A stretch of 64,000 nucleotides of DNA, taken from positions 248,001-312,000 of the IMG/VR virus record IMGVR_UViG_3300020469_003050; one strand, written 5' to 3'. The notes beneath the pieces were generated by a model. It saw only the letters and a list, made by a program, of their open reading frames with translations. It made no database searches and was not told the origin of the DNA. Below, piece after piece: positions 1,424 to 40,893 of this stretch (position 1 is its first letter; each line of letters starts with the position of its first letter). The position numbers and the translations under genes are program-made.

Positions 1424-1772
1424 TACGTTTCTGTATAATATTTGATAGACTAGTCTCTGGTCCCCATGTTACCTCAACATCTTTTGAATTCATATTCAAT
1501 ATCCAATTCTTATACTTGCCAATCTGTGAGCCTAAAAATAAATTAATCGGCATAAGCCTATTAGACTCCCACCACCATTGTTCTCCTAATTCTACGAACT
1601 TCTTTCTTAATTCAGGTGTTGGTATTGCCTCAAAGTTGTACATCGAAGTGATTACTTGGTCTGAATTTATAATTATACCTAGATGCTCAGTAAATTCTTT
1701 TTTATTTCCGTATCTAACATATGAGAAGAACGGATAATTCTCTTGCATCCATTGTTGTTTTTCTTTGTCCAT
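1383..1772 (-). CDS. Conserved phage hypothetical protein
   Basis: ORF containing WWWESNR; minus-strand CTAAATA box ends 6 nt before the ATG. Confidence 0.75.
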   Translation of the reverse strand: MDKEKQQWMQENYPFFSYVRYGNKKEFTEHLGIIINSDQVITSMYNFEAIPTPELRKKFVELGEQWWWESNRLMPINLFLGSQIGKYKNWILNMNSKDVEVTWGPETSLSNIIQKRIKRRSVQLVRKID

Positions 1773-1809
1773 CGTTATATTTAGCTAACCTAGAAAATGG
1801 TCTCTGGGA

Positions 1810-1817
1810 GATAAATA
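1810..1817 (+). promoter_or_regulatory. T4-like late promoter (GATAAATA), leaderless ATG at 1823
   Basis: Motif recurs upstream of many structural genes; similar to T4 TATAAATA. Confidence 0.7.
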
Positions 1818-1822
1818 CATAT

Positions 1823-2620
1823 ATGAATTTAAACATGTATCAATATGAAAAAACTATTGAGATTACTTGTGCAGATGGTGACAACACAAGTAACATGACA
1901 ACTTACCTGAGGAATATGCCAATGTATGACGGACAACACAAACTTCATAAGGGTATTGATAATACTCTTAGATTTAATTTACGAGATACCGATAGAAAAC
2001 CTATCGACTTGACTAACAAAACTATTATATGGAAAATGTACGATAGAGAAACGAGAGAGAACGTACTATTCAAATACCTTACCGTCACCAACGCAACCAA
2101 AGGTATGGCACAATTAACTATATTTACAACAGATACGATAATGCTACCTCAGGGCTTTTATCAATTTGCTATGTATACTGTAGAAAATGGTGTAGAACAA
2201 ATCATATACACTGACACATACGATAATGCTAAAGGCGTAATCGAAGTCATAGACGATGTATATCCAGAGTTTGTAGATTCACAGGAAAGTTCAACATTTT
2301 TTAACGATGGCTCTTACTTTATGTCAACTGCTTTCGATGGATCTTCATCAACATCTAAGTCAAAATCAATTCATACTGTAGCTTTATACTTTGACAATTT
2401 CTCTGGAACTGTTAATTTACAAGGCGATTTAAGTGAACAACCAAGTTCACAACACTCAGATTGGTTCAATATCAATCCAAAACTATTCTCAAATCCAGAT
2501 ATCACAGTTAATAATGAGACTGGTGTACAAGCATTTGTGCTTGAAGCAAACGTAAATTGGATAAGAGTTAGATACACTGCGACTAACGGTTCTATTAAAA
2601 AAGTTCTACTAAGAAACTAA
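1823..2620 (+). CDS. Putative virion structural protein (BppU-like beta-rich N-terminus)
   Basis: LRFNLRDTDRKPIDLT pattern; late promoter; start reassigned to 1823. Confidence 0.55.
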   Translation: MNLNMYQYEKTIEITCADGDNTSNMTTYLRNMPMYDGQHKLHKGIDNTLRFNLRDTDRKPIDLTNKTIIWKMYDRETRENVLFKYLTVTNATKGMAQLTIFTTDTIMLPQGFYQFAMYTVENGVEQIIYTDTYDNAKGVIEVIDDVYPEFVDSQESSTFFNDGSYFMSTAFDGSSSTSKSKSIHTVALYFDNFSGTVNLQGDLSEQPSSQHSDWFNINPKLFSNPDITVNNETGVQAFVLEANVNWIRVRYTATNGSIKKVLLRN

Positions 2621-2628
2621 TATAGCAC

Positions 2629-2657
2629 TTGACTTTCTGGTCCTAGTTTGCTATTAT
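2629..2657 (+). promoter_or_regulatory. Sigma70 promoter with extended -10; predicted +1 is the primase ATG
   Basis: TTGACT-17-(TG)TATTAT; ATG 7 nt after the -10. Confidence 0.75.
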
Positions 2658-2663
2658 ACTAGT

Positions 2664-3665
2664 ATGGACCTTCAACAAGTAATATTCACACATATCCCTG
2701 GAAAGAACAGACAATCTAGTGGTGGCTGGACTAGTTTCAACTGCCCATGTTGTATCGAGGAAGGCGAGCCTCGTTTGGATACTAGAATGCGTGGGGGTGT
2801 TCGTAGCGACGGTGATTCCATATCATACCACTGTTTTAACTGTGGGTTCACTGCAAGCCATCGTCACGGAAGAATACTTAACAAGAAATTTTTAAAACTC
2901 ATGCGAAATATGAATATTTCTGAAAGCGAGATTAAGCGTTTACAGTTAGAAGCAATCCGTCAGAAAGAGTTGTCTGAAGGTCCATACCTATTTACATCTA
3001 AAACACAAGTGACACGTGTTCCAAGTTTTCCTGATGTCGAACTACCTGAAGGTTCGGAAGATTTGGAAGTTTTACTAGCAAAAGATAGTCCTCCAGAAGG
3101 AGCCATCTATGCAGTTAAATATTTGATTGATAGAGGAGTATATGATAATATAGAGGATTGTTATTGGTCTCCAGATAAGTTTTTTAAAAATAGAATTATA
3201 TTTCCATTTTATCAAGGAGATAGAATAGTAGGATATACTGCTAGAGATATAACTGGAAAGTCCTCGTCTAAATACATGACGAAAGCACCGAGAAAATTTT
3301 TACATAACGTAGACAAGGTAAAATCTAATAATAAATACTTAATCGTATGTGAAGGTATAATCGATGCTCTTGCATTGGATTGTATTGCGATTACAAGTAA
3401 CGAGGCTTCACAAGACCAAATTGATTATATAAATCAGTTTAAAGGAGAGGTTATTGTTTGTCCCGACAGAGACAAAGCTGGAGAGAAGTTAATCAAACAA
3501 GCCCAAGAAAATGGTTGGAGTGTATCTTTCCCTATGTGGGAGGACGACATTAAAGATGCCGCAGATGCAATTCAACGATATGGTAAACTATATACCTTAC
3601 AAAGTATTATAGATGCACGTATAAGTAACAACACTAAAATAAGTGTGAAAATGAGAATAGGATAA
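2664..3665 (+). CDS. DNA primase (T4 gp61/DnaG-like, Zn ribbon + TOPRIM)
   Basis: CPCC..CFNCG zinc ribbon, RIIFPF, GYTAR, CEGIIDAL, PDRDKAG, KDAAD. Confidence 0.92.
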   Translation: MDLQQVIFTHIPGKNRQSSGGWTSFNCPCCIEEGEPRLDTRMRGGVRSDGDSISYHCFNCGFTASHRHGRILNKKFLKLMRNMNISESEIKRLQLEAIRQKELSEGPYLFTSKTQVTRVPSFPDVELPEGSEDLEVLLAKDSPPEGAIYAVKYLIDRGVYDNIEDCYWSPDKFFKNRIIFPFYQGDRIVGYTARDITGKSSSKYMTKAPRKFLHNVDKVKSNNKYLIVCEGIIDALALDCIAITSNEASQDQIDYINQFKGEVIVCPDRDKAGEKLIKQAQENGWSVSFPMWEDDIKDAADAIQRYGKLYTLQSIIDARISNNTKISVKMRIG

Positions 3666-3668
3666 ACT

Positions 3669-4310
3669 ATGAAAAAAGTAAAGAGTACAATTATACCACA
3701 ACCCAAAGAACAACCGGCACCACCCCCACCCCCTCCGATGCCAACTCCGCCAGTACCACCAAAGCAGGCAGGTGAGTTCTTAAGAGAGAATGGTGTATTG
3801 TTCATGGACAAAGAGTTCAACCAAGACAACTGTATGCCTCTTGTAAGAATGATTTTAGAATACAATCTGATGCCAAAAGATAAAGCACCAGATATTATTC
3901 ACTTATATATTAATTCACCAGGTGGTTTGGTAGACAGTTGTATGCATCTAATTGATACAATCAAACAATCACGTATTCCAGTATATACATATGGAATGGG
4001 TTCTATTGCAAGTTGTGGAGTTATGTTGATGATGAGTGGTGTAAAAGGTCATCGTTATGTCACACAAAATACCGCAGTAATGTCACATGAATTCTCAGGT
4101 GGTCAAAAAGGTCAATATCATGATATGTTAGATAGTAAAAAACATATGGATTGGACTAACGAAAAGTTATTAGAACATTATATCAAGTGTACAGGTAAAA
4201 CAAAAACTTACATTCGTAAACATCTATTAGCACCCAAGACAGACCATTGGCTTACTCCAGAAGAAGCAGTTAAGCATGGTATCGCAGACGAATTAATTAC
4301 AACTTATTAA
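3669..4310 (+). CDS. clpP: ATP-dependent Clp protease proteolytic subunit with Pro-rich N-terminal extension
   Basis: IHLYINSPGG, IASCG (catalytic Ser), MSHE, WLTPEEAVKHGIADE. Confidence 0.9.
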   Translation: MKKVKSTIIPQPKEQPAPPPPPPMPTPPVPPKQAGEFLRENGVLFMDKEFNQDNCMPLVRMILEYNLMPKDKAPDIIHLYINSPGGLVDSCMHLIDTIKQSRIPVYTYGMGSIASCGVMLMMSGVKGHRYVTQNTAVMSHEFSGGQKGQYHDMLDSKKHMDWTNEKLLEHYIKCTGKTKTYIRKHLLAPKTDHWLTPEEAVKHGIADELITTY

Positions 4311-4320
4311 CAGTTTTCTA

Positions 4321-4349
4321 TTGACTCTTTCAACTAAATCTGTTATTCT
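4321..4349 (+). promoter_or_regulatory. Sigma70 promoter
   Basis: TTGACT-17-(TG)TATTCT. Confidence 0.6.
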
Positions 4350-4382
4350 AACAGTAATAATTTTGTAACAAAGGTGGGTTCT

Positions 4383-5327
4383 ATGAAGATTATCGCAGGC
4401 AACAGTAATGTTGAACTGGCTGAGAAGGTAGCTGAACATTGTTTTACAGATATTGTTCCAGCAGAAATAAAAACATTTGCAGATGGTGAATGCTCAGTAG
4501 AGTTTCATGAAAATATCAGAGGTGAAGACGTTTTCATTATTCAAAGCACAAGCACTCCTGTAAATGATAACTTAATGGAATTATTGATTATGATTGATGC
4601 GGCAAAACGTAGTAGTGCTAGTCGTATCACTGCGGTAATTCCTTATTTTGGTTATGCAAGACAAGATAGAAAGAGTGCATCACGTACTCCTATAACTGCA
4701 AAGTTAGTTGCGAATCTGCTTACAAAAGCAGGTGCTGATAGAATTTTAACAATGGACTTACATGCTGGTCAAATTCAAGGATTCTTTGATATTCCTGTTG
4801 ATGATTTAACGAGTAGGTTAGTCTTTGCAAAAGATATTCAAAGAACTATTAAAGTAACAGAAGAACCAATTGTATTTGTTTCACCAGATGCTGGTGGTAC
4901 AGTAAGAGCAAGAAAGTTTGCTGATATGTATCATGCCAATTATGCAATCGTTGACAAACGAAGACCAGAAGCAGGCAAGGCAGAAGTTATGAATTTGATT
5001 GGTGAAGTAAAAGGCAAACATGCAATTCTTGTAGATGATATTGTTGATAGTGGTGGTACTCTTTGTAATGCGGCTGAGGCAATTTTAAATGCAGGTGCAT
5101 TAAGTGTTAGAGCATATATCACTCATGGAGTGCTAAGTAACAAAGCATGTGAAAGAGTTGAAAAAAGTAAATTAGATGAACTTGTTATTACTGATAGTAT
5201 CAATCATAAACTTTCGTGGAAAAAGACACGTTCAGTAAGTGTTTGTGGATTATTAGGAGAAGCAATCAGACGAGTTAATAATGAAGAAAGTGTAAGTAGT
5301 TTATTTAAGGTTAAGATACATTCATGA
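4383..5327 (+). CDS. prs: Ribose-phosphate pyrophosphokinase
   Basis: [45 protein letters not shown]. Confidence 0.97.
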
Positions 5328-5752
5328 AAATTAAATTAGATATTACTAAGATTAATAGTAGGTTGCATTGGACAACACTTTATAGTGAAAAATTATTATT
5401 AGCAGTAATTGGATTACTAACTATGTTTGCGGCTGGTTCAGATATTTTTCACATGTTAAAGAACATGCAAGTAGAACTAGGCGACTTGTTTTTACTTTTT
5501 ATCTATGCAGAGATTGTAGGAATGGTAGGAGCATTCTATATTAGTAATAGAATACCTGTTACTCTACCTATTATCATTGCTATGACGGCACTTTGTAGAT
5601 TAATTGTTCTACATAGTAAAGAAGCAGATCCTTGGATGCTTGTTGCAGAAGCAGGTGCTATTGCAGTATTGGCAGGCGCGGCATACTTAATGAGTGCAAA
5701 AGAAAAATTAAGTTTAGAGAAAAAAGAAATAAGAGAAAACAAAAATGTATAA
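5324..5752 (+). CDS. psiE: Phosphate-starvation-inducible PsiE family membrane protein
   Basis: [34 protein letters not shown], 4 TM. Confidence 0.8.
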
Positions 5753-6260
5753 AGTTACCGCATATTTTAAAAATCGTACATATACAGAAACTTTTAAAAA
5801 CTTATATGATGCGATAGAAGCCAAGGATAATGCAGATGCATATTATCCAATAAGAGTAACATTAGAAGGAGTATTTTCTATGAAAGAATGGGTATATGAT
5901 TGTTGGAATAGTGTAATGGATGATAAAAGAAATCCTCTAAGTAACATTCCAGATTTTAGTACACGACATATGATTATGCAAATATTAGCATGGATGTGGT
6001 GTATAACTTTTTCGTTTATTGTAGGCAGTTTATGGATAGGTATAATTAGCATGATGGCACATGTAGTATTACTAGGAGCCATTGCCGTAACAGTAGCGAC
6101 ATTTGAAACTGCAAAACGTAACCCTATAAAATTAATGAATTTTGCTAATGGGTATACGTCATATGGACGTGGCAGAAACTATACTATCTACAGAGATAAA
6201 GATGGTAACGCACATAAAGTAGAGTTACCAGAAGGAGACCCGGGCGGCGAACACGAATAA
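5745..6260 (+). CDS. Hypothetical membrane protein; possible internal start at 5880
   Basis: 2 TM segments; internal AGGAG SD before the ATG of MKEWVYD. Confidence 0.6.
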   Translation: MYKVTAYFKNRTYTETFKNLYDAIEAKDNADAYYPIRVTLEGVFSMKEWVYDCWNSVMDDKRNPLSNIPDFSTRHMIMQILAWMWCITFSFIVGSLWIGIISMMAHVVLLGAIAVTVATFETAKRNPIKLMNFANGYTSYGRGRNYTIYRDKDGNAHKVELPEGDPGGEHE

Positions 6261-6265
6261 AGAAG

Positions 6266-6294
6266 TTGACATTCAACGTTGGATTGAGTAGAAT
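6266..6294 (+). promoter_or_regulatory. Sigma70 promoter; predicted +1 is the helicase ATG
   Basis: TTGACA-17-TAGAAT; ATG 7 nt after the -10. Confidence 0.8.
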
Positions 6295-6300
6295 AGAAGT

Positions 6301-7704
6301 ATGGCAGAAGAAGTAAAAGATTATAGTTTAGATTTGCAGAAATTGTTTGTTCAGTTTATGATAACTGATCCTGAACTTTATTCAAGAGTCAGAGCGATAG
6401 TCGAACCTAAGTATTTTGATAGAAATATCAGAAAAGTAGTCGAAGTATTAGTTAATCATAGTGAAGAATATGCTACGATTCCAACTACTGAAATTATCAA
6501 AGCACAAACAGGACAAGAGATAGAAAAATTAGATAACATCAATCAACACGTAGATTGGTTTATCGATGAGTTTGAAACTTTTTGTAGACACAAAGCAATC
6601 GAAAAAGCAATCATTGATAGTGCAGACTTGCTTGAAACAGGTAAGTATGGAGAAGTAGAACTTAGAATTAAAGAAGCAGTACAAACTGGACTTGCACGTT
6701 CATTAGGTACAGATTACTTTGCAGATCCTAGAGCAAGACTTGAAAAACTAAAAGACAATAACGGACAAATCACAACTGGTTGGAAATCATTAGATGATAA
6801 ACTTTATGGTGGTATCAATCGTGGTGAGATTTCTATTTTCTGTGGTGGATCAGGTGCAGGTAAATCTTTGTTCATGCAAAATATGAGTTTGAATTGGGCA
6901 GAAGCAGGAATGAATTGTGTATACTTTACACTTGAACTTTCAGAAGAACTATCAAGTATGCGTATGGATGCAATGCTTACTGATAGAAGTACAAAAAGAA
7001 TTTTTAAAGAATTAGATGATGTAGAATTACAAGTTAAAACTAAAGGTAAGAAGTCTGGCATGTTACGTGTTAAGTATCTTCCTTCTGGTTCTTCAATTAA
7101 TGACTTGCGTTCTTACATTAAAGAACTACAGATACAAACTGGCAAACGTGTAGATTGTATGTGTGTAGATTACTTAGATTTGTTAATGCCAGCAACAAAG
7201 AAAGTGTCAGCAAGTGATTTGTTTATTAAAGACAAATATGTAACAGAAGAAATTCGTAACTTTGCAATGGAAACTGAAACTGTTTTGGTAACTGCATCAC
7301 AGTTAAATAGAAGTGCAGTTGAAGAAATCGAATTTGACCATTCACATATCGCAGGTGGTATCTCTAAAATTCAAACTGCGGATAATGTTATTGGTATCTT
7401 TACAAGTCAAGCAATGAGAGAACGTGGTCAATATCAATTACAGTTATTGAAAACACGTTCAAGTAGTGGTGTAGGTAGCAAAATTAATCTAGTATTTGAC
7501 AGAGATAGTCTTAAGATTTCAGATGATACAGAAGGGTTAGCTGATGCTCAAAATACATCAAATACGATGAATGTAGTCGATACATTACGTCAAAAAACCG
7601 TAGTAAAAGCACCAGAAACTAACGAAGAAGAAAAGACTGATGTTGCAATGAACCTGAGAGCAATGTTAAAGACCAAGACACGCACTCCTTTTGATGAAAA
7701 CTGA
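6301..7704 (+). CDS. Replicative helicase (T4 gp41/DnaB family)
   Basis: ITTGW, GGSGAGKS Walker A, LELSE, VDYLDL, TASQLNR, LKTR. Confidence 0.95.
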   Translation: MAEEVKDYSLDLQKLFVQFMITDPELYSRVRAIVEPKYFDRNIRKVVEVLVNHSEEYATIPTTEIIKAQTGQEIEKLDNINQHVDWFIDEFETFCRHKAIEKAIIDSADLLETGKYGEVELRIKEAVQTGLARSLGTDYFADPRARLEKLKDNNGQITTGWKSLDDKLYGGINRGEISIFCGGSGAGKSLFMQNMSLNWAEAGMNCVYFTLELSEELSSMRMDAMLTDRSTKRIFKELDDVELQVKTKGKKSGMLRVKYLPSGSSINDLRSYIKELQIQTGKRVDCMCVDYLDLLMPATKKVSASDLFIKDKYVTEEIRNFAMETETVLVTASQLNRSAVEEIEFDHSHIAGGISKIQTADNVIGIFTSQAMRERGQYQLQLLKTRSSSGVGSKINLVFDRDSLKISDDTEGLADAQNTSNTMNVVDTLRQKTVVKAPETNEEEKTDVAMNLRAMLKTKTRTPFDEN

Positions 7705-7710
7705 TAAATA
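7703..7710 (+). promoter_or_regulatory. Late promoter GATAAATA
   Basis: Recurrent motif at the start of the late block. Confidence 0.65.
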
Positions 7711-7731
7711 CAGTTAGAACGGAGAAATATC

Positions 7732-16120: not shown

Positions 16121-16149
16121 TTGCATTGTTTAAGTTTTTATAGTATACT
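16121..16149 (+). promoter_or_regulatory. Sigma70 promoter; predicted +1 is the exonuclease ATG
   Basis: TTGCAT-17-TATACT; ATG 7 nt after the -10. Confidence 0.7.
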
Positions 16150-16155
16150 ATAAGT

Positions 16156-16845
16156 ATGCTAAATGAAAAATTTAAATATCAATCGCTTGAGCGTGTCAAT
16201 ATTGATGGTTCCCGCCATTATCAGACACCCGGAGGCAAACCATTGCCAAGTGTAACTACAGTACTAGATGCACTTAAAGACAAAACAGCATTACATGAAT
16301 GGCGTAAAAGAGTAGGCGATGATGAAGCAAATCGCATTATGAAACTTGCTACAGGCATAGGCACACAAGTTCACTTACATATCGAAAAATTTATACTTGA
16401 AGAAGATAGACCAAATGGATCTAATCTTATTCATCAAATGGCAAAAGAATTATCAAACATTGTTATTGAAAAAGGACTCTCAAATGTAGATGAAGTTTGG
16501 GGTACAGAAGTTCCTCTGTATTATCCCGGATTATATGCAGGCACCACAGATTGTGTTGGTGTATGGAAAGGTAAACCTGCAATCATCGACTTTAAGACTT
16601 CTCGTAAACCAAAGAAACGTGAATGGATTGATGATTACTTTTTACAAGGTGCCGCATATTCGGCCGCACACAATGAAATACATGGAACAGATATTAAAAC
16701 TATTGTAATTATGATGATTGGTTGGGACGAAGAAGCAGACAATAAAGGCAATTATCAAGAATTTGTCGTAGAAGAACCTGAATTTAATAAGTATTCACTG
16801 CAATGGGCGAACAAGGTTCAAGAGTATTTTGATAAATACATGTAG
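16156..16845 (+). CDS. PD-(D/E)xK exonuclease (RecB/Cas4/MGME1-like)
   Basis: PSVTTVL, GTQVH, YAGTTD, IIDFKTS, YFLQGAAY. Confidence 0.88.
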   Translation: MLNEKFKYQSLERVNIDGSRHYQTPGGKPLPSVTTVLDALKDKTALHEWRKRVGDDEANRIMKLATGIGTQVHLHIEKFILEEDRPNGSNLIHQMAKELSNIVIEKGLSNVDEVWGTEVPLYYPGLYAGTTDCVGVWKGKPAIIDFKTSRKPKKREWIDDYFLQGAAYSAAHNEIHGTDIKTIVIMMIGWDEEADNKGNYQEFVVEEPEFNKYSLQWANKVQEYFDKYM

Positions 16846-21565: not shown

Positions 21566-22165
21566 ATGAACAGAGTTTGGTTATTTGGTGAAACATCTGA
21601 TTTTTCTAAGACTTTATTAAGAGCAATACGAGAGAAAACATCAGATGTTCAAACATTTGGTAGAAGAAATATATCATATGATGAAGATTTAAGGACACAG
21701 ATTAGTTTAAATGAAAATCTTCCAGATAAAGTAATCATAAATGTAAATTTAGGTTTTACTTGGGGTAAAACAAAGGCACTAAAATGGGTAGATCCTTTAC
21801 AAGTTATATATTTTATTTCAGAGTTACTTAAGGCTTTTCACGAATCAAATAAAGATATAACAGTTGTATATATTACAAGTTCAATAACAATGGGTGTATG
21901 CCCTGAACAATATTTTCTAAAACATAAAGATTATGTTTCTATCAGGCATGTACAACAAACTATGTGGTCTGCATATACATCAGACAAACTTAAAGTATTA
22001 GCAGTTAGCCCTTCTAATGTGAATACTGATAATATGGAAAAGTATGCTGAAAGAATAGTAGGGTTTCTTTATAATCCTCCTTCTGTCAGAAAACCAATAA
22101 TAGATTTAAACCAACATAAAAGTATTAGAGATGAATGGTTTGAATTGTACAAACTTGATAAATAG
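21566..22165 (+). CDS. Degenerate SDR/Rossmann-like protein
   Basis: VWLFGETSDFSK, VVYITSS, YxxxR, LAVSP. Confidence 0.45.
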   Translation: MNRVWLFGETSDFSKTLLRAIREKTSDVQTFGRRNISYDEDLRTQISLNENLPDKVIINVNLGFTWGKTKALKWVDPLQVIYFISELLKAFHESNKDITVVYITSSITMGVCPEQYFLKHKDYVSIRHVQQTMWSAYTSDKLKVLAVSPSNVNTDNMEKYAERIVGFLYNPPSVRKPIIDLNQHKSIRDEWFELYKLDK

Positions 22166-22169
22166 ATAT

Positions 22170-22859
22170 ATGCGTGTAGAAGAAATTATAAAATCAGTTG
22201 AAGAAGGGATAAATGACCCTCATATATTTAAAGCAGTATTCATGGCTGGCGGCCCTGGCTCCGGTAAGTCTTTTGTTGCTAAAAAGTTTCTTTCAGGAAC
22301 AGGCTTAAAGATGGTCAATTCAGATGAAATATTTGAACACCTAATGAAGAAAAATGATTTACCACTAGAACCAGACACTATTGTTTCACCACAAGGTAGA
22401 GAACAAAGAGATAGAGCAAAGATACTAACTAAGTTGCGTAAAGATACTTATATCGACGGACGTTTAGGTTTAGTTATTGATGGTACTGGTAAAGATGTAA
22501 TGAAGATTGGTAAGATTAAAGAAAAATTAGCACAAATCGGCTACGATAACATGATGCTATTTGTTAATACAAGTGAAGAAGTAGCACAAGACCGTAATAC
22601 TCAACGTACAAGAAGTATTCCAACAGAACTAGTAACAAAGATGTGGAAACAAGTACAAGATAACATTATGAAATTTCAACAAATGTTTAGTGCAGGTCGT
22701 TTCTTTGTTGTTGATAATTCTGGTGGACTAGAAGATCCAGAAAGAGCAGAAAACTTTACAAAAGTCAATAAGCAAATTGATAAGTTTCTTGTTCAACCAC
22801 CAACTAAGCGAGAAGCTAAGAAGTGGATCGAAGACCAAAAAGCAAAACGTTCAAGTTAG
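22170..22859 (+). CDS. P-loop kinase (zeta-toxin/AAA_33/PNK-like) with capsid-targeting-like leader
   Basis: AGGPGSGKS, VNSD, LVIDGTG, RNxxR; GATAAATA 22157-22164 ends 6 nt before the ATG. Confidence 0.8.
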   Translation: MRVEEIIKSVEEGINDPHIFKAVFMAGGPGSGKSFVAKKFLSGTGLKMVNSDEIFEHLMKKNDLPLEPDTIVSPQGREQRDRAKILTKLRKDTYIDGRLGLVIDGTGKDVMKIGKIKEKLAQIGYDNMMLFVNTSEEVAQDRNTQRTRSIPTELVTKMWKQVQDNIMKFQQMFSAGRFFVVDNSGGLEDPERAENFTKVNKQIDKFLVQPPTKREAKKWIEDQKAKRSS

Positions 22860-27262: not shown

Positions 27263-28258
27263 ATGCACAGACAAGCATACATACCACCCGGAGCAGGTAA
27301 AAATTTCATATCATTATATGTTTTATGGGAAGGTGACCGTTCTAAGATTTTAAAGTATCAGGAACAAGTAAATGAGTTTCAAGTACTAGGTCAACACTCT
27401 ACTCTTTGGGATTATACACAATTAAGAAACCCAACTGTTGAAGGTGCTATAAAAGAATTTGAAGCTAAGAATCCAAAAGTAGTAAATTTGTTGAAACCGT
27501 TCAGAAGCAGGGTAAAAAAAGAATGGTTTCTTGAAACTGCTGAAAAATTTGGTGCATCACCTCAGGGTTTACATGTACTTGAAAGAGATTGGTATTGGCT
27601 ACCTATAATGGATTTCTCAATATTTTATGTATTATTTTTTGGTAAAAACAAAGAGTTAGATTATGTTATAAATCAACTTTGCGATTATCCTTGGTCATCA
27701 CATAACGTAGCTAAAAAAGAATTAACATCTATAATACATTATTCACCAAATGATACTCTTGGTATGTCTCAAGTAAAAAATGAAATTAAAACATTACGTA
27801 TATCATTTAAGGATAGTGAAGAATATATATCAGACTTGCTTTATGCAAAACATTCCATTCCTACTCAACATGAAAGAAATAATGCTGATACAGTAGCAGA
27901 AGAACGTTTCTATATAAAAGATACATCAACAACTGTAGTAGACGAAGTAATATCATATAGAAAGATATTTATGGAACAAAACAAGGCAGAATTAGAAAGG
28001 CTATTTGGATTTTTTGGGAAAGAAGAATATTTTGATAAGAATACAGAAACGATTATACAAGATTTTCAAGAATATCATAAGACAAATAAAACTATGGTTA
28101 GAAATTTTGATTTCTCAAATGTACCTGGATATGAAAAATCTTTTTTTAAAGGCTGGAAAGATAAACACGCCTCTGTAGAACATGTCGCTAACCTTGAAAA
28201 ACATGATAAAGAATTTGGAACAAACTGGAAAGCAGAACACGATGCCTCAAAAATTTAA
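27263..28258 (+). CDS. Sulfotransferase-fold-like protein, paralog 1
   Basis: N-term PPGAGKNFI; C-term SYRKIF..ELERLFGFFG..FQEYH. Confidence 0.5.
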   Translation: MHRQAYIPPGAGKNFISLYVLWEGDRSKILKYQEQVNEFQVLGQHSTLWDYTQLRNPTVEGAIKEFEAKNPKVVNLLKPFRSRVKKEWFLETAEKFGASPQGLHVLERDWYWLPIMDFSIFYVLFFGKNKELDYVINQLCDYPWSSHNVAKKELTSIIHYSPNDTLGMSQVKNEIKTLRISFKDSEEYISDLLYAKHSIPTQHERNNADTVAEERFYIKDTSTTVVDEVISYRKIFMEQNKAELERLFGFFGKEEYFDKNTETIIQDFQEYHKTNKTMVRNFDFSNVPGYEKSFFKGWKDKHASVEHVANLEKHDKEFGTNWKAEHDASKI

Positions 28259-29192
28259 AGAGTTATATGCTTTGCCAGGTGCGGCAAGTAATTTTATTTC
28301 ATACATGGCATTATATGGAGAACCCACAGACCTTGGTATAGTAGGACAGAAACACAACGTATCAAATGAATATGATATATGGAGAGAGAAATCAAAATTC
28401 GTATTTACTGAGAACTTACAAAGATTAACTGTAAAGCGGATGCATCTTGAAGGAAAAAAGCATTGTTGGCATTGTGGGTTTCCAAATAATACTACATACA
28501 AGTATGGCAATTCTTTGGGTATGTGGTTACAGGATAAGTTGAGACATGAATATCCTAAGCAATGGGGAAAATGTCAGGCTTTCTTAGCAGGCAAAAAACC
28601 ATGGTTTGAAGACTTTGTAGAAAAATACAAAGATGAACCTAACCACAGTGATAGAGTAGATTTTCTCAAGTATCATTGGGATCTTATAGGAATTTATGAT
28701 GTTACAATGTACATAACATCATTTTTAGGATACGAAGATGAAATGGATAAGTGGATTGCTAAATGTATAAATTTACGATATGCGATTGCTATAGATGTAG
28801 GACTTGAACCATATGTTATTACTCACTTTCACCCATTAACTCAGTTTAAGTATTTAAAAATGCCTGATGCAATTAAATTCGATACAATGGCAATTAGCAT
28901 AGACAAAGATGAAGACATAGAATTAGTTAATGCAATACATTACAGAAAGAGACCAGAAGTAGTAATCATTGACGAAATGAATAAACTTAGTATTGCTAAT
29001 AAAAAGTTTTCAGATAGGAGTATAGATTATAGAGATTTGTTCATCGAACCTAAAAAAGAATCGATAAGAGAATTATATGATTTTTTTGATAATGTAGAGT
29101 TATTTGATTCTAAACCAAATTATATAATCAGTAAATTCAAGTCTTACCATGAAATAAACTTAGGGTTATTAGAAGATGCAAAAAGTAGATAA
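28242..29192 (+). CDS. Sulfotransferase-fold-like protein, paralog 2
   Basis: LPGAASNFI; DYRDLFIEP..IRELYDFF..FKSYH. Confidence 0.5.
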   Translation: MPQKFKELYALPGAASNFISYMALYGEPTDLGIVGQKHNVSNEYDIWREKSKFVFTENLQRLTVKRMHLEGKKHCWHCGFPNNTTYKYGNSLGMWLQDKLRHEYPKQWGKCQAFLAGKKPWFEDFVEKYKDEPNHSDRVDFLKYHWDLIGIYDVTMYITSFLGYEDEMDKWIAKCINLRYAIAIDVGLEPYVITHFHPLTQFKYLKMPDAIKFDTMAISIDKDEDIELVNAIHYRKRPEVVIIDEMNKLSIANKKFSDRSIDYRDLFIEPKKESIRELYDFFDNVELFDSKPNYIISKFKSYHEINLGLLEDAKSR

Positions 29193-33210: not shown

Positions 33211-33215
33211 TAGAT

Positions 33216-36801: not shown

Positions 36802-36809
36802 AAAAAGGG

Positions 36810-36838
36810 TTGACTTTCCCGAATCATTATGCTATATT
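36810..36838 (+). promoter_or_regulatory. Sigma70 promoter of the ncRNA
   Basis: TTGACT-17-(TG)TATATT. Confidence 0.75.
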
Positions 36839-36845
36839 AATAAAC

Positions 36846-37062
36846 ATAAGCATAAAACAATTTAGCGGTTGTTTTATTGTAGTGCAAGGAAGAGGCTGTT
36901 ACCAGACGGTCGAACTTGACTAGTTAGGGGTGGTACCCAGGCTTAAAGCTGAGAGGCTAAGAGTCACATCGTTCTACCGAACGGAACTAGGTTCCCTGGA
37001 TTCAGAATGGTATCTGTGTCGAGGGGTTGGGGGTGTAACCAAGTCCCTCCTACTTTGCTTAT
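36846..37062 (+). ncRNA. Free-standing structured ncRNA, ~217 nt, family unassigned
   Basis: GC-rich island with no long ORF, between promoter and terminator; 5' ATAAGCA pairs with 3' TGCTTAT; internal stems. Confidence 0.75.
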
Positions 37063-37094
37063 ATTTCTGATTGCAATACCAAGCAATCAAAATT

Positions 37095-37158
37095 AAGAGA
37101 CGGTTAGCAAACCATATTTTACTCACTTTCATTTCATATTGCTAACTGTCTCTTTTTT
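37095..37158. terminator. Long-loop hairpin terminator
   Basis: AAGAGACGGTTAGCAA / TTGCTAACTGTCTCTT + T run. Confidence 0.7.
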
Positions 37159-37852
37159 ATTTCTCTCCAATTATAGATTTTATTTTCCAAGGTGTAAAGC
37201 ATACAGTACCTAAACTTATGTGGTCTGCTCCTGCATCTATATAAGTCTGAGCATCTTCTTTAGAATATACTCCACCACCTGCTATGACTTCTACGTGAGG
37301 ATACTTATCTTTTATATAAGCAATAGTCCCCAAGGTATAGGGTTGAAGAATCTTTCCAGAAAGCCCACCCTTTTCACTGTGTAATGTGTTACTTGCATGA
37401 ATTTGTTTATATCCTTTATCTACTATTTTATCTATTAATTTATGTTTTGCAGTTGGAGGTATTTTAACTATACACCATTTATTCTGCATATGTTCTGGAA
37501 ACTTATCGAAACCTTCAAATGTCGTAGTGTCTTCATGTGAATCTAAGTTAGGACAACTTATATTTAATTCTATATTTCTAACACGACTAATAGTTGTTCT
37601 TATTGTTTCCCAATCTGATTTTTCTATGGCCGCAAGTGATAACAAATTATCATATGATGTCTTCATCATTCCAGCACGTAATCCAGGATTGCGTAAACCT
37701 AATTTGTTTCTCCAACCCTGTTTAGTATATCTTAATGTTTTGATTATTTGTTTTAGTCTTCCTGGTCTTGGTTCTACTGTCCAGGTACCTGTAACACTAA
37801 CTGTATCTTTAAAGTTGAGATAGTTTCCAAATGGTGCGGCTATAAAAAACAT
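37157..37852 (-). CDS. Dihydroorotate dehydrogenase-like flavoprotein (compact)
   Basis: NKLGLRNPG, ELNISCPN, SNT, GGLSG, IAGGGV, AGAD. Confidence 0.8.
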   Translation of the reverse strand: MFFIAAPFGNYLNFKDTVSVTGTWTVEPRPGRLKQIIKTLRYTKQGWRNKLGLRNPGLRAGMMKTSYDNLLSLAAIEKSDWETIRTTISRVRNIELNISCPNLDSHEDTTTFEGFDKFPEHMQNKWCIVKIPPTAKHKLIDKIVDKGYKQIHASNTLHSEKGGLSGKILQPYTLGTIAYIKDKYPHVEVIAGGGVYSKEDAQTYIDAGADHISLGTVCFTPWKIKSIIGEK

Positions 37853-37886
37853 TTATTATTTTCCTCATAAAACTATTTATATAAGA

Positions 37887-38708
37887 TTATTTCTTATCTA
37901 GTGCAGAAATCATCCTAGTCATTCCAATTCCTCCACCAACTCTTGGGAAGAAATCAAATTCTAAGAATTTTTCTAGTTCTGCTTCTACTCTTTCTTTAGA
38001 AAATAGTTTGTACAATAATTCTGAGTATTCACCATTTGTTATTGTGTGAAAAGTATCTCTCATCATTTCTACATCACATGAACGTTCTGCGGATCCAATA
38101 GTTTCCATTCCACCTAAGATAACATCTATCTTCTTACTAGTTGCACCGCCTTCATTTCTGCTCATATTCCAGAACGGAGATGTCATTTCAGGAAAATCTG
38201 TAATCATTGTTGAACCGAATTCTTCAAACATTTTAGTTTCATGTTCTGCTTCCATTTCTACTGTTGGTTCTAAGTTGTAATGTTTTTGCCAATCAGCATA
38301 TGTTCTTTCTTCTGGTTTAGGGAACTCTAAGTATTCACATAGTTCGTATTCCATCTTTTTCAAATCATCAATGTCACCTGGCATTTCAAATTCAAACATT
38401 GGGAAGATAATATCGTGTCTACCTGGAATTGCATTTGGCTCTTGTCTATAGGACGTGGAGACACAAAAAAAGCCCTTTGTATCGGGCTTTGAGAGTAATT
38501 CGTGTTCTAACCACATTTGGCCTGTTTGGGGAAGCGGCCAGACTTGGCCTGCGTAATTGTATGTTGCTACATTGAACGGGTCTTCACATGCCGCCAATAT
38601 AGATAATCTGTTTTGGGTATGGACTTCTAAAAATCCTTTATCCAAAAAAAATGACCTTAAAAGGCCAACTGTTCTTGTAAATTTATCCGGAGATATTAAT
38701 TGTGTCAT
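37887..38708 (-). CDS. Asx-tRNA-synthetase catalytic-domain-only paralog (asparagine synthetase-like)
   Basis: GFLEVHT, LPQTGQ, SYRQE..GRH..FEFE, ETIGSAER, GGGIGMTR; no anticodon-binding domain; minus-strand late box 38783-38790. Confidence 0.8.
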   Translation of the reverse strand: MTQLISPDKFTRTVGLLRSFFLDKGFLEVHTQNRLSILAACEDPFNVATYNYAGQVWPLPQTGQMWLEHELLSKPDTKGFFCVSTSYRQEPNAIPGRHDIIFPMFEFEMPGDIDDLKKMEYELCEYLEFPKPEERTYADWQKHYNLEPTVEMEAEHETKMFEEFGSTMITDFPEMTSPFWNMSRNEGGATSKKIDVILGGMETIGSAERSCDVEMMRDTFHTITNGEYSELLYKLFSKERVEAELEKFLEFDFFPRVGGGIGMTRMISALDKK

Positions 38709-38965
38709 TTTCTTTTCCTTTTTGTTATCCAAAAAAAAATATAGCCAAAAAAAAATTTGGTATTCGTTTTTGATGTTGTTTTTATTTATCTTTTTTATTT
38801 AAAAAGTTATCAACAATTCAATTAAAAATTGTATTGATTTCATATCTATTTTGTGTTACATTTATAAATATGAAAGTAACAATGAGGTTACAACCAGGCA
38901 CCAATCGAGCCTGGTCTAATTATGTGAGCACCGTGGTAAAGACGGTAAGCAGAAGGAGATAAAAA

Positions 38966-39928
38966 ATGGATGCACTCACCCTATGGATGGCAATAGGATT
39001 TCTATTTGCCGCATATTCAGTAATCGCAAACGATTCAGTACAAACTCTTGGTACTTGGATTGCATCAAATAACGAAAAATTTAATTGGAAGATAATGTGG
39101 GGAGCCGCAAGTGCGGTACTGCTTTATACTTTGTGGTATGGTTGGACAACTAATGGCGGAGATATTAGTTACGGACGATTAAACAAAATTCCATTTCAAG
39201 AAATACAATGGTATCATGCCGCCGCACCAGGCTTACTATTGATATTAACAAGAATAGGTGTACCAGTAAGTACAAGTTTCTTAGTGCTAAGTGCATTTGC
39301 TAGTACGTTTGTATTAGAGAAGATGCTAGTCAAATCAATGATGGGTTATGCAGTTGCGGCTGTGGCGGCATATGTAATCTGGATTGGTGTTACTAAAATA
39401 CTTGATGAAGCAAAACCAGTCGCTGAAAATCATAAAATGTATTGGCGAGTAGGTCAGTGGGTAACAACTGGCTTTTTATGGTTTACTTGGTTATCACATG
39501 ATATGGCAAACATTGCCGTATTCTTACCAAGACAAATCCCATTTGATTTAATGGTAATGGTAAGTGCAGTATTTGTATTTGGCTTAGGTTATATATTTTA
39601 TACTGGTGGTGGTAAAATACAAAACATCGTAATTGAAAAACATAACACACGTTATGTAAGAAGTGCTACAATAATTGATTGTGTATATTTTCTAATTCTT
39701 TGGTTCTTCAAAGAACTGAATGATATACCAATGTCAACAACTTGGGTATTCGTAGGATTACTTTGTGGTCGTGAACTTGCTATGGCAACTATTACAGGTA
39801 AAGAAAAGTTTAAAACTGTTTTCCCTCTTGTAACTAAAGACTTCATAAAGATGATGATTGGTTTAGGTGCAAGTGTTGGTGTAGTCTTATCTATTCACTA
39901 TATAATTGTTCCCAACGGTTTACACTAA
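38966..39928 (+). CDS. PiT/PHO4-like anion (phosphate or sulfate) transporter
   Basis: Duplicated PiT-like motifs IANDSVQTLGT..PVSTS and SHDMANIA..PMSTT; about 9-10 TM. Confidence 0.6.
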   Translation: MDALTLWMAIGFLFAAYSVIANDSVQTLGTWIASNNEKFNWKIMWGAASAVLLYTLWYGWTTNGGDISYGRLNKIPFQEIQWYHAAAPGLLLILTRIGVPVSTSFLVLSAFASTFVLEKMLVKSMMGYAVAAVAAYVIWIGVTKILDEAKPVAENHKMYWRVGQWVTTGFLWFTWLSHDMANIAVFLPRQIPFDLMVMVSAVFVFGLGYIFYTGGGKIQNIVIEKHNTRYVRSATIIDCVYFLILWFFKELNDIPMSTTWVFVGLLCGRELAMATITGKEKFKTVFPLVTKDFIKMMIGLGASVGVVLSIHYIIVPNGLH

Positions 39929-40052
39929 AAAGATAAATAACTTTATAGAACAAAACTAATAACTAAGTACGCATAGGATTATAAACAAAAGTATAAGTGT
40001 GTCGGACACTGCGTAACACATTCTGACATTCCACAAAACAAATTTATTGGAG

Positions 40053-40074
40053 CCCATTCTTCGGAATGGGTTTT
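40053..40074 (+). terminator. Terminator with cUUCGg tetraloop
   Basis: CCCATTC-TTCG-GAATGGG-TTTT. Confidence 0.75.
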
Positions 40075-40110
40075 CCATTTGTACCTGTGACATAAATGAT
40101 AAATACATAT

Positions 40111-40893
40111 ATGCGTTATTCAGATATTATAAACATCACATTTAACCAAACACTCAATGAAGCATTCGATGTCAATGAGGCAGGAGAAAGTGCGGAAAGA
40201 CAAGAGAATGGTTTTGTGAAAACAATAGCAGAAGCGATAGAACAGAATGGTGGTAAGCCTATTAAATTAATAGCAGGCGAAACTACTATTGATGGAGTAA
40301 CCGGTGCAGTAAAATACACTGGTAGACAAGATTCAGGTTCAGAGCCATATACAGATATTGTACTTAAAACAAGTAAAGGTGATTTAAATCTTTCAATGAA
40401 AGGCCCATCAGCACCATCATTAGCTGGCGGTGGGTTACGTGGTATTCAAGCAATTATACCAGATATCGGTGAAAACTTTTTTACTGCGGCCTATAAGAAT
40501 TTATTAAATAATGGTTACAAATCTGGAGATAAGATTCCAGATACAGTAGGTAAATTGAACGATAAGGACAAAATGTTACTTGTAGTTGGAACAAAGGCTA
40601 TGGGAGGTCCTATAGATTATATGTATATTGGTCCAATGGACGTATCGCATGAACAAAAAGATAATACAGTAAAAGTCAATGGATCTTTATATACATCAAA
40701 GTACTATGCAGAAAAGAAAGACTTATATTTCAGACTACGTGCTAGACGTATAGACCAGACGTTTGATGAGGACGCAAAATATAGTAATGGAATCCCTAAA
40801 ATATATGGAAAATCACCATCAAAAGGTGATAGTGCAGGAAGACTTGTTATCACAGATAAGCCATCTTCTAAGGCATTAAAGATTATATTCTAA
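40111..40893 (+). CDS. Restriction-endonuclease-like (PD-(D/E)xK) late protein with capsid-targeting-like leader
   Basis: ERQE..EPYTDIVL..NLSMK; GATAAATA 40098-40105 ends 6 nt before the ATG. Confidence 0.55.
   Translation: MRYSDIINITFNQTLNEAFDVNEAGESAERQENGFVKTIAEAIEQNGGKPIKLIAGETTIDGVTGAVKYTGRQDSGSEPYTDIVLKTSKGDLNLSMKGPSAPSLAGGGLRGIQAIIPDIGENFFTAAYKNLLNNGYKSGDKIPDTVGKLNDKDKMLLVVGTKAMGGPIDYMYIGPMDVSHEQKDNTVKVNGSLYTSKYYAEKKDLYFRLRARRIDQTFDEDAKYSNGIPKIYGKSPSKGDSAGRLVITDKPSSKALKIIF

What the first reader, a model, noticed from the sequence alone, without database searches (positions are those of the whole stretch)
1772..40111. Systematic leaderless mRNAs at both promoter classes, in a phage carrying IF3 and bS21
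Seen: primase (ATG 2664), helicase (6301) and exonuclease (16156) each start exactly 7 nt after a sigma70 -10 box with no SD. Four late genes (1772 minus, 1823, 22170, 40111) each have ATG exactly 6 nt after TAAATA; 1823 and 40111 share GATAAATACATATATG. Established: these spacings place +1 on or next to the A of AUG; leaderless initiation uses 70S ribosomes and is sensitive to IF3 level; bS21 influences SD-dependent initiation. Inference: core replication genes and selected late enzymes are translated leaderlessly, and phage IF3/bS21 may rebalance initiation between leaderless and SD-led messages.
Basis: partly seen in the sequence, partly recalled or inferred. Interest (0 to 1): 0.68.

Follow-up and report, generated by a model that had tools for sequence, protein, structure and literature searches.

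The report
Leaderless genes in a marine jumbo phage
A 343-kb marine phage places promoters so close to some genes that their messages should begin at the start codon itself, and dozens of related phages keep this exact layout, but the suggested link to the phage's own IF3 and ribosomal protein bS21 is not supported.

Summary
At 2664, 6301 and 16156 a TTGnnn-17-TAnnnT promoter ends 6 nt before an ATG with no Shine-Dalgarno (SD). At 1772(-), 1823, 22170 and 40111 TAAATA ends 5 nt before the ATG. Consensus matches alone mean little here (88 promoter-like sites against 81.5 in shuffles). Relatives supply the weight.

- Primase: 16 of 16 distinct upstream regions keep the layout.
- Exonuclease: 43 of 47 keep it.
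- Kinase-like gene 22170: 23 relatives have TAAATA exactly 5 nt before the ATG with no SD. Twenty have an 18-38-nt gap, 18 of them with an SD (p 2e-10).

The phage has a gp55-type late sigma factor. Its leadered late promoters show T then A at the fifth and sixth nt after TAAATA, which marks the sixth as the transcript start.

"Systematic" overstates the case. About 15 of at least 415 genes fit, and most genes use an SD.

IF3 and bS21 are present, adjacent and complete, in a late-type operon with a ClpX-like gene. bS21 occurs throughout the lineage, including relatives whose exonuclease gene lacks this layout. Published work says both factors work against leaderless translation.

No transcript starts were mapped. 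Leaderless genes: about 0.8. IF3/bS21 link: about 0.1.

The parts
2629..2666 (+). Sigma70-type promoter abutting the primase start: -35 TTGACT 2629-2634, 17-nt spacer, -10 TATTAT 2652-2657, 6 nt, ATG 2664. Gene 2664-3665.
   Evidence: 16 of 16 distinct upstream regions from relatives (65-100% aa identity) keep the hexamers. The ATG is the 7th nt after the -10 in 14 and the 8th in 2. None has an SD.
6266..6303 (+). Sigma70-type promoter abutting the DnaB-like helicase start: TTGACA 6266-6271, 17 nt, TAGAAT 6289-6294, 6 nt, ATG 6301. Gene 6301-7704.
   Evidence: 7 distinct relatives (77-100% identity) keep the 7th/8th-nt spacing without an SD. A clade at 73-75% identity keeps the promoter but has a 24-29-nt leader with an AGGA SD.
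16121..16158 (+). Sigma70-type promoter abutting the exonuclease start: TTGCAT 16121-16126, 17 nt, TATACT 16144-16149, 6 nt, ATG 16156. Gene 16156-16845.
   Evidence: Of 47 distinct relatives, 38 have the ATG at the 7th nt and 5 at the 10th. TTG and T-12, A-11, T-7 are 100% conserved, while -5 to -2 carry only 0.3-0.7 bits. Cultured Pseudomonas phage PA5oct gp244 has TTGACA-17-TATAAT-7 nt-ATG.
1770..1825 (.). 50-nt divergent intergenic region with two back-to-back late-type promoters. Plus strand: GATAAATA with TAAATA 1812-1817, then ATG 1823 (gene 1823-2620, virion-protein-like). Minus strand: TAAATA at 1783-1778, then ATG 1772 (gene 1383-1772).
   Evidence: GATAAATACAtnTATG is conserved in all syntenic relatives and the residues after Met vary. 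On the minus side TAAATA is kept with the ATG at the 6th-8th nt. No RNA contig of X15-X17 covers 1774-1840, and an X16 contig ends at 1773.
22159..22172 (+). Late-type promoter TAAATA 22159-22164, 5 nt, ATG 22170. Kinase-like gene 22170-22859. The stop of the upstream gene (22163-22165) lies inside the promoter.
   Evidence: 23 distinct relatives have the ATG at exactly the 6th nt and none has an SD. 20 have an 18-38-nt distance, 18 of them with an SD (Fisher p 1.8e-10).
40051..40113 (+). Terminator hairpin 40051-40075, then late-type promoter TAAATA 40100-40105, 5 nt, ATG 40111. Gene 40111-40893, function unknown.
   Evidence: Homologue L287 starts at the aligned ATG (MKYSE against MRYSD). 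Homologues L289/L290 have ATAAATA followed by an SD (TAAGGT) and the ATG about 30 nt downstream.
798..835 (+). Weaker candidate: TTTACA 798-803, 17 nt, TATACT 821-826, 6 nt, ATG 833. DNA-polymerase-associated protein, phrog_11778, gene 833-1423.
   Evidence: The layout is kept only in the closest clade. In relatives at 77-79% identity the start overlaps the upstream stop (ATGA). The -35-like hexamer lies in upstream coding sequence.
41578..41616 (+). Contrast case and likely promoter of the IF3 operon: TAAATA 41578-41583, an ATG at 41587 inside the leader, SD AAGGAG, then ATG 41614 (membrane protein).
   Evidence: It shows that an in-frame ATG near the transcript start can be a bystander when an SD and ATG follow.
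43179..44453 (+). ClpX-like AAA+ ATPase directly upstream of IF3, overlapping it by 17 nt.
   Evidence: zf-C4_ClpX, AAA_2 and ClpB_D2-small.
44437..44982 (+). Phage IF3, 181 aa, with both domains and an ATG start.
   Evidence: E 1e-30 to a solved IF-3 chain (5lmn_X).
44975..45241 (+). Phage bS21, 88 aa, with an Asn-rich N-terminal extension of about 24 aa. A terminator-like hairpin follows.

Best explanation
A discrete minority of genes in this phage are expressed from leaderless mRNAs. The phage is a 342.6-kb marine member of the PA5oct/Atu_ph07-like jumbo lineage.

At the primase, helicase and exonuclease genes, a host sigma70-type promoter fills nearly the whole 41-44-nt gap after the preceding gene. 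Its -10 hexamer ends 6 nt before the ATG, so the usual start point, the 7th nt, is the A of AUG.

At a set of late genes (1772-, 1823, 22170, 40111, and about five more elsewhere in the genome) the motif (G/C)ATAAATA ends 5 nt before the ATG. This motif resembles the T4 late promoter, which a gp55-type sigma factor reads. In T4 it spans -13 to -6, so the A of AUG is again +1.

These messages have no SD and would be started by ribosomes that recognise a 5'-terminal AUG.

Shown here: the layout, its conservation, the absence of an SD, the either/or alternation with SD-led leaders among orthologues, the gp55-type sigma factor, and a T-then-A start signature at leadered late promoters.

Inferred: the actual transcript 5' ends and the mode of initiation.

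A further inference concerns the benefit. An internal AUG without an SD on a read-through transcript should be translated poorly. Each such gene would then be made only when its own promoter fires, which gates translation in time.
For: Sequence at all sites.

Genome-wide spacing:
- The distance from promoter to start is bimodal for both classes: a peak at 6-11 nt, a gap, then 18-35 nt.
- Peak p-values are 1e-3 and 2.5e-4.

Relatives:
- Primase: 16 of 16 distinct upstream regions keep the layout with no SD.
- Exonuclease: 43 of 47 have the ATG at the 7th or 10th nt. The conservation profile is that of a promoter: TTG, T-12, A-11 and T-7 are invariant and T-1 is 97%, while the filler carries 0.3-0.7 bits.
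- Helicase: leaderless in the 77-100% identity clade and SD-led in the 73-75% clade.
- Kinase family: 0 of 24 short-distance forms have an SD against 18 of 20 long-distance forms, p 1.8e-10.
- The 1823/1772 pair is conserved.
- The 40111 homologues L289/L290 have ATAAATA followed by an SD and the ATG.

Promoter class:
- A gp55-type sigma factor is present: phrog_12791 E 4e-80, T4 gp55 E 6e-5.
- T4 TATAAATA lies at -13 to -6 (PMC1524935).
- ATAAATA late motifs and a gp55-like factor occur in jumbo phages CBB and GAP32 (PMC5259590).
- 32 leadered late promoters show T at the 5th nt (22 of 32) and A at the 6th (23 of 32) after TAAATA.

Other support:
- PA5oct exonuclease has the same layout.
- The AUGs are unpaired in weak predicted folds.
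- Metatranscriptome contigs are compatible: no cover of 1774-1840, contigs starting at 2676-2704 with 3-18 times the depth of the one that crosses the promoter, and a contig starting at 6303.
Against: - No transcript 5' ends were mapped. The RNA data are assembled contigs, which cannot show starts.
- Two contigs cross the proposed start points (2528-2695 and 6105-6304). This means read-through transcripts or DNA carry-over.
- Promoter-like matches as such are not enriched in this AT-rich DNA.
- The host and its capacity for leaderless translation are unknown.
- The class is small, about 15 of at least 415 genes.
- Window 833 is a doubtful member.
- In a few relatives the spacing is 8-10 nt, which gives leaders of 1-3 nt rather than none.
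Confidence: 0.8

Rival explanations
1. The phage IF3 and bS21 are there to rebalance initiation between leaderless and SD-led messages. One version: variant factors relax the discrimination against 5'-terminal AUGs. Another: late production of the factors shuts down leaderless replication messages.
For: IF3 and bS21 are adjacent and complete, and sit in an operon behind a late-type promoter. bS21 occurs in all 5 lineage members checked and IF3 in 4 of 5. PA5oct has bS21 and a leaderless-type exonuclease gene. bS21 has an unusual N-terminal extension. bS21 status is known to affect leaderless translation (PMC10491246).
Against: - There is no discriminating association. Phosso and Atu_ph07 carry both genes but lack the layout at the exonuclease gene, and PA5oct has the layout without IF3.
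- The canonical direction is opposite: loss of bS21 favours leaderless lambda cI (PMC10491246), and from my own knowledge IF3 antagonises leaderless initiation.
- Leaderless genes occur in the late class as well, when these factors would be made.
- Most phage genes are SD-led, so the simpler role is to sustain ordinary initiation.
- No sequence feature tested here bears on discrimination.
Confidence: 0.1
2. The promoters are real, but the proteins are mainly made from longer read-through transcripts by SD-independent internal initiation. The A/U-rich -10 or TAAATA sequence would then act as a landing pad for ribosomal protein S1 or as a coupling element. On this view the fixed distance reflects translation rather than the transcript start.
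For: RNA contigs cross 2664 and 6301. No terminator separates these genes from the upstream gene, except at 40111. At window 833 relatives use stop-start overlap.
Against: - An A/U-rich enhancer does not explain the invariant TTG 17 nt upstream of the -10, nor the invariant T-12, A-11 and T-7.
- It does not explain why orthologues with the same promoter moved 18-38 nt away always gain an SD.
- It does not explain the T-then-A start signature at the same distance in leadered promoters.
- The upstream stops lie 41-44 nt away from the three replication genes, too far for coupling.
Confidence: 0.08
3. Chance matches in AT-rich DNA combined with wrongly chosen start codons.
For: Promoter-like sites are as common as in shuffled sequence. 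Three late genes have upstream in-frame ATGs. Several apparent cases elsewhere are false, because an SD and ATG lie just downstream.
Against: The exact layout is conserved across dozens of diverged relatives with free variation of the filler bases. Protein alignments begin at these ATGs.
Confidence: 0.02

Closest known systems
Leaderless lambda cI mRNA from promoter PRM, and leaderless mRNAs in general
   Same: The promoter is placed so that transcription starts at the A of AUG. There is no SD, and a 5'-terminal AUG is needed. Initiation is sensitive to the uS2/bS21 content of the ribosome (PMC10491246) and, from my own knowledge, to IF3.
   Different: Here there is a set of about 15 lytic-cycle genes at two promoter classes in a jumbo phage, including promoters read by a phage-encoded late sigma factor. 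The transcript ends are inferred, not mapped.
T4-type late promoters read by gp55 (TATAAATA at -13 to -6), and the ATAAATA late motif of Rak2-like jumbo phages CBB and GAP32
   Same: The core motif is the same, a gp55-type sigma factor is present, and the distance to the inferred start is the same (PMC1524935, PMC5259590).
   Different: The consensus here is (G/C)ATAAATA. I found no report in the searchable library of such promoters giving leaderless messages. gp33 and gp45 partners were not looked for.
T4 temporal control of translation on early read-through versus late transcripts, for example gene e lysozyme and soc (from my own knowledge)
   Same: The proposed benefit is the same: the protein is made only from the transcript that starts at the gene's own late promoter.
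   Different: T4 hides the ribosome-binding site in a hairpin on the long transcript. Here the site would be absent altogether and the 5' end itself would be the signal. This parallel is an inference.
Pseudomonas phage PA5oct (Arenbergviridae), the nearest cultured relative; also Phosso, Atu_ph07 and Vibrio phage 2.275.O
   Same: Helicase 54%, exonuclease 44% and primase 34% identical. It depends on host RNA polymerase and has TTGAC / TATAATA promoters (PMC7318152). Its exonuclease gp244 has the promoter abutting the ATG, and bS21 is present.
   Different: PA5oct has no IF3. Its paper does not mention leaderless messages. Its helicase start has a normal purine-rich upstream region.
Phage phiKZ and phage AR9 transcript maps
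   Same: Both are jumbo phages with mapped transcript starts.
   Different: phiKZ shows no leaderless transcript (PMC8244752), and AR9 leaders are 26-491 nt (PMC5312081). Both use their own RNA polymerases.

Membership tests
Leaderless mRNA | Primary transcript 5' end at the start codon or within a few nt of it | not testable with these tools
   Only assembled metatranscriptome contigs were available, and they cannot show starts. The feature is inferred from promoter layout and its conservation.
Leaderless mRNA | No Shine-Dalgarno sequence upstream of the start | tested here: met
   None of the seven window sites has an SD core. Short-distance relatives with an SD: primase 0 of 16, exonuclease 1 of 43, kinase family 0 of 24.
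Leaderless mRNA | AUG start codon | tested here: met
   All seven are ATG. The scripts that scored relatives searched only for ATG, so those counts are not an independent check. In PA5oct primase the codon at the 7th nt is GTG.
Leaderless mRNA | Initiation by the 70S / 5'-AUG route, with sensitivity to IF3 and uS2/bS21 | not testable with these tools
   This needs biochemistry.
Sigma70-type promoter | -35 TTGACA-like and -10 TATAAT-like hexamers 16-18 bp apart, conserved in relatives against a diverging background | tested here: met
   TTG, T-12, A-11 and T-7 are 100% conserved in 38 distinct exonuclease sequences, while the spacer and filler vary.
T4-type late promoter (gp55-dependent) | TATAAATA-like motif about 6 nt upstream of the transcript start, lying upstream of late or structural genes | tested here: met
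   (G/C)ATAAATA occurs 47 times on the + strand against 12 on the - strand as GATAAATA, matching the gene orientation. 32 leadered sites show T at the 5th and A at the 6th nt. The motif precedes a virion-protein-like gene and the head protease. The first base differs from T4.
T4-type late promoter (gp55-dependent) | A gp55-family sigma factor is encoded | tested here: met
   Genome 179018-179944: phrog_12791 E 3.8e-80, phrog_234 E 2.9e-21, and a T4 gp55 match at E 6e-5.
T4-type late promoter (gp55-dependent) | gp33 co-activator and sliding-clamp (gp45) dependence | not tested
   Not searched. CBB lacks detectable gp33 and gp45 (PMC5259590).
Translation initiation factor IF3 | N-terminal and C-terminal IF3 domains joined by a linker, in one protein of about 180 aa | tested here: met
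   IF3_C at E 3e-20. Full-length alignments to solved IF3 chains cover residues 13-177. phrog_9787.
Ribosomal protein bS21 | Ribosomal_S21 domain | tested here: met
   PF01165 at E 1.7e-15, above the cut-off. Aligns to solved bS21 chains over residues 27-84. There is an extra N-terminal stretch of about 24 aa.

The most novel reading that the evidence does not exclude
The whole jumbo-phage lineage (PA5oct, Atu_ph07, Phosso and the marine clade) carries its own bS21, usually with IF3, as part of a translation-reprogramming strategy. In that strategy phage-modified ribosomes treat 5'-terminal AUGs differently. Leaderless replication and late genes would be the phage's private channel, and orthologues would switch between the leaderless and the SD-led state as this channel is gained or lost.
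Probability: 0.1. Interest if true: 0.85.

Novelty: new variant of a known kind. Interest (0 to 1): 0.6.

Why it matters
Leaderless messages are well known, with lambda cI as the classic case, and they are common in some bacteria. They have not, as far as the searchable literature shows, been described for T4-type late promoters or as a conserved trait of core replication genes in a jumbo-phage lineage.

The comparative data give a natural experiment. The same gene, behind the same promoter, is either leaderless without an SD or has an 18-38-nt gap with one. That fixes the transcript start of an uncultured phage's promoters to the nucleotide.

It also shows that gene callers which demand an SD or take the longest ORF will misplace these starts. 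Three of the four plus-strand late starts are extended by the longest-ORF rule, and the PA5oct primase start looks misannotated.

Finally, it offers a testable idea: a missing leader restricts translation to transcripts from the gene's own promoter. PA5oct is cultured and can test it directly.

Tried and rejected
- Nucleotide search of GenBank phages with 10 kb of the window found nothing. Protein searches gave the relatives instead.
- Simple promoter scanning gave no enrichment over shuffles, so I did not use it as evidence.
- The abundant early-promoter family (aaaacTTGACA...GAATCGTGT-TATATT) first looked leaderless. An in-frame ATG follows 7-10 nt after the -10, but each case has an SD and ATG 18-27 nt further on. 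I rejected these as leaderless.
- Window 41587, where an ATG is the 4th nt after TAAATA, was rejected for the same reason: SD AAGGAG and ATG 41614 follow.
- Window 833 was demoted after its relatives showed stop-start overlap instead.
- The data are contigs only, so they are compatible with the proposal but cannot show starts. X18 holds a relative about 90% identical, not this phage.
- The PA5oct promoter table (its Table S3) is not held as text.
- Co-occurrence of IF3/bS21 with the layout does not discriminate.
- 5'-end folding is weak everywhere and does not discriminate.
- Literature searches for leaderless plus bS21, IF3 or T4-like late promoters found no prior link. The library is incomplete.
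- I did not attempt host identification. The large protein searches, structure prediction and complex prediction were not used, because no claim here rests on them.

Full report
**What the window is.** The window is bases 248001-312000 of a 342,607-bp virus record with direct terminal repeats and 34.8% G+C. Near-identical DNA occurs in marine, seawater and viral metagenomes from 14 studies. Its nearest cultured relatives by protein are:
- Pseudomonas jumbo phage PA5oct (helicase 54%, exonuclease 44%, primase 34% identity);
- Sinorhizobium phage Phosso;
- Agrobacterium phage Atu_ph07;
- Vibrio phage 2.275.O.

A simple codon-usage gene call gives at least 415 genes, 330 of them on the plus strand.

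**The observation.**
- Primase: TTGACT 2629-2634, 17 nt, TATTAT 2652-2657, 6 nt, ATG 2664.
- Helicase: TTGACA 6266-6271, 17 nt, TAGAAT 6289-6294, 6 nt, ATG 6301.
- Exonuclease: TTGCAT 16121-16126, 17 nt, TATACT 16144-16149, 6 nt, ATG 16156.
- Late sites: TAAATA ends 5 nt before ATG 1823, 22170 and 40111, and before ATG 1772 on the minus strand.

None of the seven has an SD core. Gene identities hold. IF3 (44437-44982) and bS21 (44975-45241) are adjacent and complete.

The longest-ORF rule extends 1823, 22170 and 40111 to upstream ATGs. In this AT-rich DNA a consensus promoter match by itself means nothing: 88 sites were found against 81.5 +/- 9.5 in shuffles.

**Genome-wide spacing.** Most genes use an SD. 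59% of 5'-most starts have a core of 4 nt or more, against 17% of background ATGs.

The distance from promoter to start is bimodal for both promoter classes.
- After sigma70-type promoters, ATGs that open long ORFs peak at the 7th nt: 8 against about 2, p 1e-3.
- After TAAATA they peak at the 6th nt: 10 against about 2.5, p 2.5e-4, or 0.013 after correction.
- In both classes there is then a gap and a broad second peak at 18-35 nt, the ordinary leaders.

Many apparent hits are false.
- An abundant early-promoter family (aaaacTTGACA...GAATCGTGT-TATATT) has an in-frame ATG near the start point but an SD and ATG 18-27 nt further on.
- Window 41587 behaves the same way.

After curation about 5-6 sigma70-type and about 9 late genes remain.
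- Sigma70-type: window 2664, 6301 and 16156, genome 82103 and 238148, and doubtfully window 833.
- Late: the four in the window, plus among others the head protease at genome 167039 and a SAM-decarboxylase-like gene at 126340.

The class is real but small, so it is not "systematic".

**Comparative evidence, which decides the matter.** IMG/VR holds many relatives.
- **Primase.** All 16 distinct upstream regions (65-100% protein identity) keep TTGAC(T/A), a 17-nt spacer, TAnnnT and then 6 nt (14 cases) or 7 nt (2 cases) before the ATG. The spacer and filler diverge freely, no SD is present, and the protein alignment starts at residue 1.
- **Exonuclease.** Of 47 distinct regions, 38 have the ATG at the 7th nt and 5 at the 10th. 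In the 38, TTG at -35 to -33 and T-12, A-11 and T-7 are invariant. T-1 is 97% conserved, and positions -5 to -2 carry only 0.3-0.7 bits. This is the profile of a promoter whose +1 is the A of ATG. PA5oct gp244 has TTGACA-17-TATAAT-7 nt-ATG.
- **Helicase.** The 77-100% identity clade keeps the ATG at the 7th or 8th nt without an SD. A clade at 73-75% identity keeps the promoter but has a 24-29-nt leader with AGGA. More distant relatives have no promoter there.
- **Kinase-like gene 22170.** 23 distinct relatives have TAAATA with the ATG at exactly the 6th nt, one at the 9th, and none has an SD. 20 have an 18-38-nt distance and 18 of those have an SD (Fisher p 1.8e-10).
- **The 1772/1823 pair.** GATAAATACAtnTATG is conserved on the plus side, with variable residues after Met. 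TAAATA is kept on the minus side with the ATG at the 6th-8th nt.
- **40111.** One homologue starts at the aligned ATG. Others have ATAAATA followed by an SD and the ATG about 30 nt downstream.

**Promoter classes and start points.** The genome encodes a gp55-type late sigma factor: phrog_12791 E 4e-80, T4 gp55 E 6e-5. The T4 late motif lies at -13 to -6 (PMC1524935). An ATAAATA late motif with a gp55-like factor is described for jumbo phages CBB and GAP32 (PMC5259590).

The leaderless cases are not needed to place the start. 32 leadered late promoters in this genome show T at the 5th nt (22 of 32) and A at the 6th (23 of 32) after TAAATA, a pyrimidine(-1)/purine(+1) signature. For sigma70 promoters the usual +1 is the 7th nt after the -10, which is established knowledge. 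So in both classes the A of AUG sits on the expected +1.

**RNA data.** Only assembled metatranscriptome contigs were available, laid on 1500-7400 (5,901 letters).
- None of the three exact-match runs covers 1774-1840, the divergent intergenic region.
- One contig ends at 1773.
- Contigs begin at 2676-2704 with 3-18 times the depth of the single contig that crosses 2528-2695.
- One contig begins at 6303, while another spans 6105-6304.

These are compatible with the proposed starts plus some read-through or DNA carry-over, but they are not proof. Predicted folds of the first 45 nt are weak, with the AUG unpaired.

**Mechanism.** The best reading (about 0.8) is true leaderless expression of this gene set. 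One feature suggests a rationale. At the three replication genes the promoter fills almost the whole 41-44-nt gap after the preceding gene. At 22170 the upstream stop codon lies inside the promoter. An SD-less AUG inside a read-through transcript should be translated poorly, so the protein would be made only when its own promoter fires. T4 reaches the same end by hiding ribosome-binding sites in long transcripts (my own knowledge). This step is inference.

**IF3 and bS21.**
- The two genes close an operon that starts at a late-type promoter (TAAATA 41578-41583, SD-led ATG 41614). Its genes are a membrane protein, a ClpX-like ATPase, IF3 and bS21, followed by a terminator.
- bS21 is present in PA5oct, Phosso, Atu_ph07 and two marine relatives, 5 of 5. 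IF3 is present in 4 of 5, all but PA5oct.
- Phosso and Atu_ph07 lack the layout at the exonuclease gene, and PA5oct has it without IF3. Presence of the factors therefore does not track the layout.
- Ribosomes lacking bS21 favour leaderless lambda cI (PMC10491246). IF3 antagonises leaderless initiation (my own knowledge).
- Ordinary versions of the two proteins would thus favour SD-led messages, which are the majority here.
I put it at about 0.1.

**Novelty.** Leaderless messages and phage examples of them are known. phiKZ has none (PMC8244752), and AR9 leaders are 26-491 nt (PMC5312081). I found no report of leaderless messages from T4-type late promoters, or of such conservation in this lineage. 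The library is incomplete. I rate this a new variant of a known kind, of moderate interest and directly testable in PA5oct.

Noticed in passing
Genome positions outside the window: 48194, 80879, 88592, 116298, 117066, 125276, 236985; also 317293, 340360 and 340584: A conserved early-promoter family, aaaacTTGACA-(N)-GAATCGTGT-TATATT/TATTAT-ATACATAAT(G/C). Seven copies carry an ATG about 3-4 nt into the transcript, in frame with an SD-led ATG 18-27 nt downstream. Dual starts are possible. My screen only listed in-frame cases, so the frame agreement may be a selection effect.
   Followed up: partly
window 41578-45270: IF3 and bS21 close an operon that begins at a late-type promoter. It also encodes a multi-pass membrane protein and a ClpX-like AAA+ ATPase with a zinc finger. 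An HSP20 gene lies at 46040-46483.
   Followed up: partly
PA5oct NC_071039.1 170985-171143; Phosso PV764938.1; Atu_ph07 NC_042013.1; two IMG/VR relatives (G001, G002): bS21 is encoded by all five relatives checked and IF3 by four (not PA5oct). The two genes are adjacent in the marine genomes, 7 kb apart in Phosso and about 1.5 kb apart across the record origin in Atu_ph07.
   Followed up: partly
L296 (PA5oct 145705-147100), primase gp261: The annotated GTG start directly abuts the -10 hexamer of a TTGACA-17-TATAAT promoter. An in-frame GTG lies at the 7th nt, so the annotated start is probably 2 codons too long. The gene may be leaderless with a GUG start.
   Followed up: no
L298 (Atu_ph07 27926-28985), exonuclease: The ATG lies 4 nt after a strong hairpin, with no SD or recognisable promoter.
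   Followed up: no
window 44975-45046: The phage bS21 has an N-terminal extension of about 24 aa, rich in Asn (MTSYNNSYRNKNNRND...), that is absent from solved bacterial bS21 chains. Its C-terminus ends sooner than in the 71-aa solved chains.
   Followed up: partly
window 798-835: The DNA-polymerase-associated gene at 833 has a promoter-like site 6 nt before its ATG only in the closest clade. Relatives at 77-79% identity overlap the upstream stop (ATGA). A 14-nt insertion appears to have created the -10-like box.
   Followed up: yes
window 1855-3446, run X18: One seawater metatranscriptome holds a relative about 90% identical as a single 1.6-kb contig at high depth (155). The contig runs across the gene boundary at 2620-2664.
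   Followed up: no
window 432-486: A strong ordinary promoter (TTGACT-17-TATAAT, 11 of 12 matches) lies 25 nt upstream of ATG 486. This is a leadered neighbour of the leaderless set.
   Followed up: no
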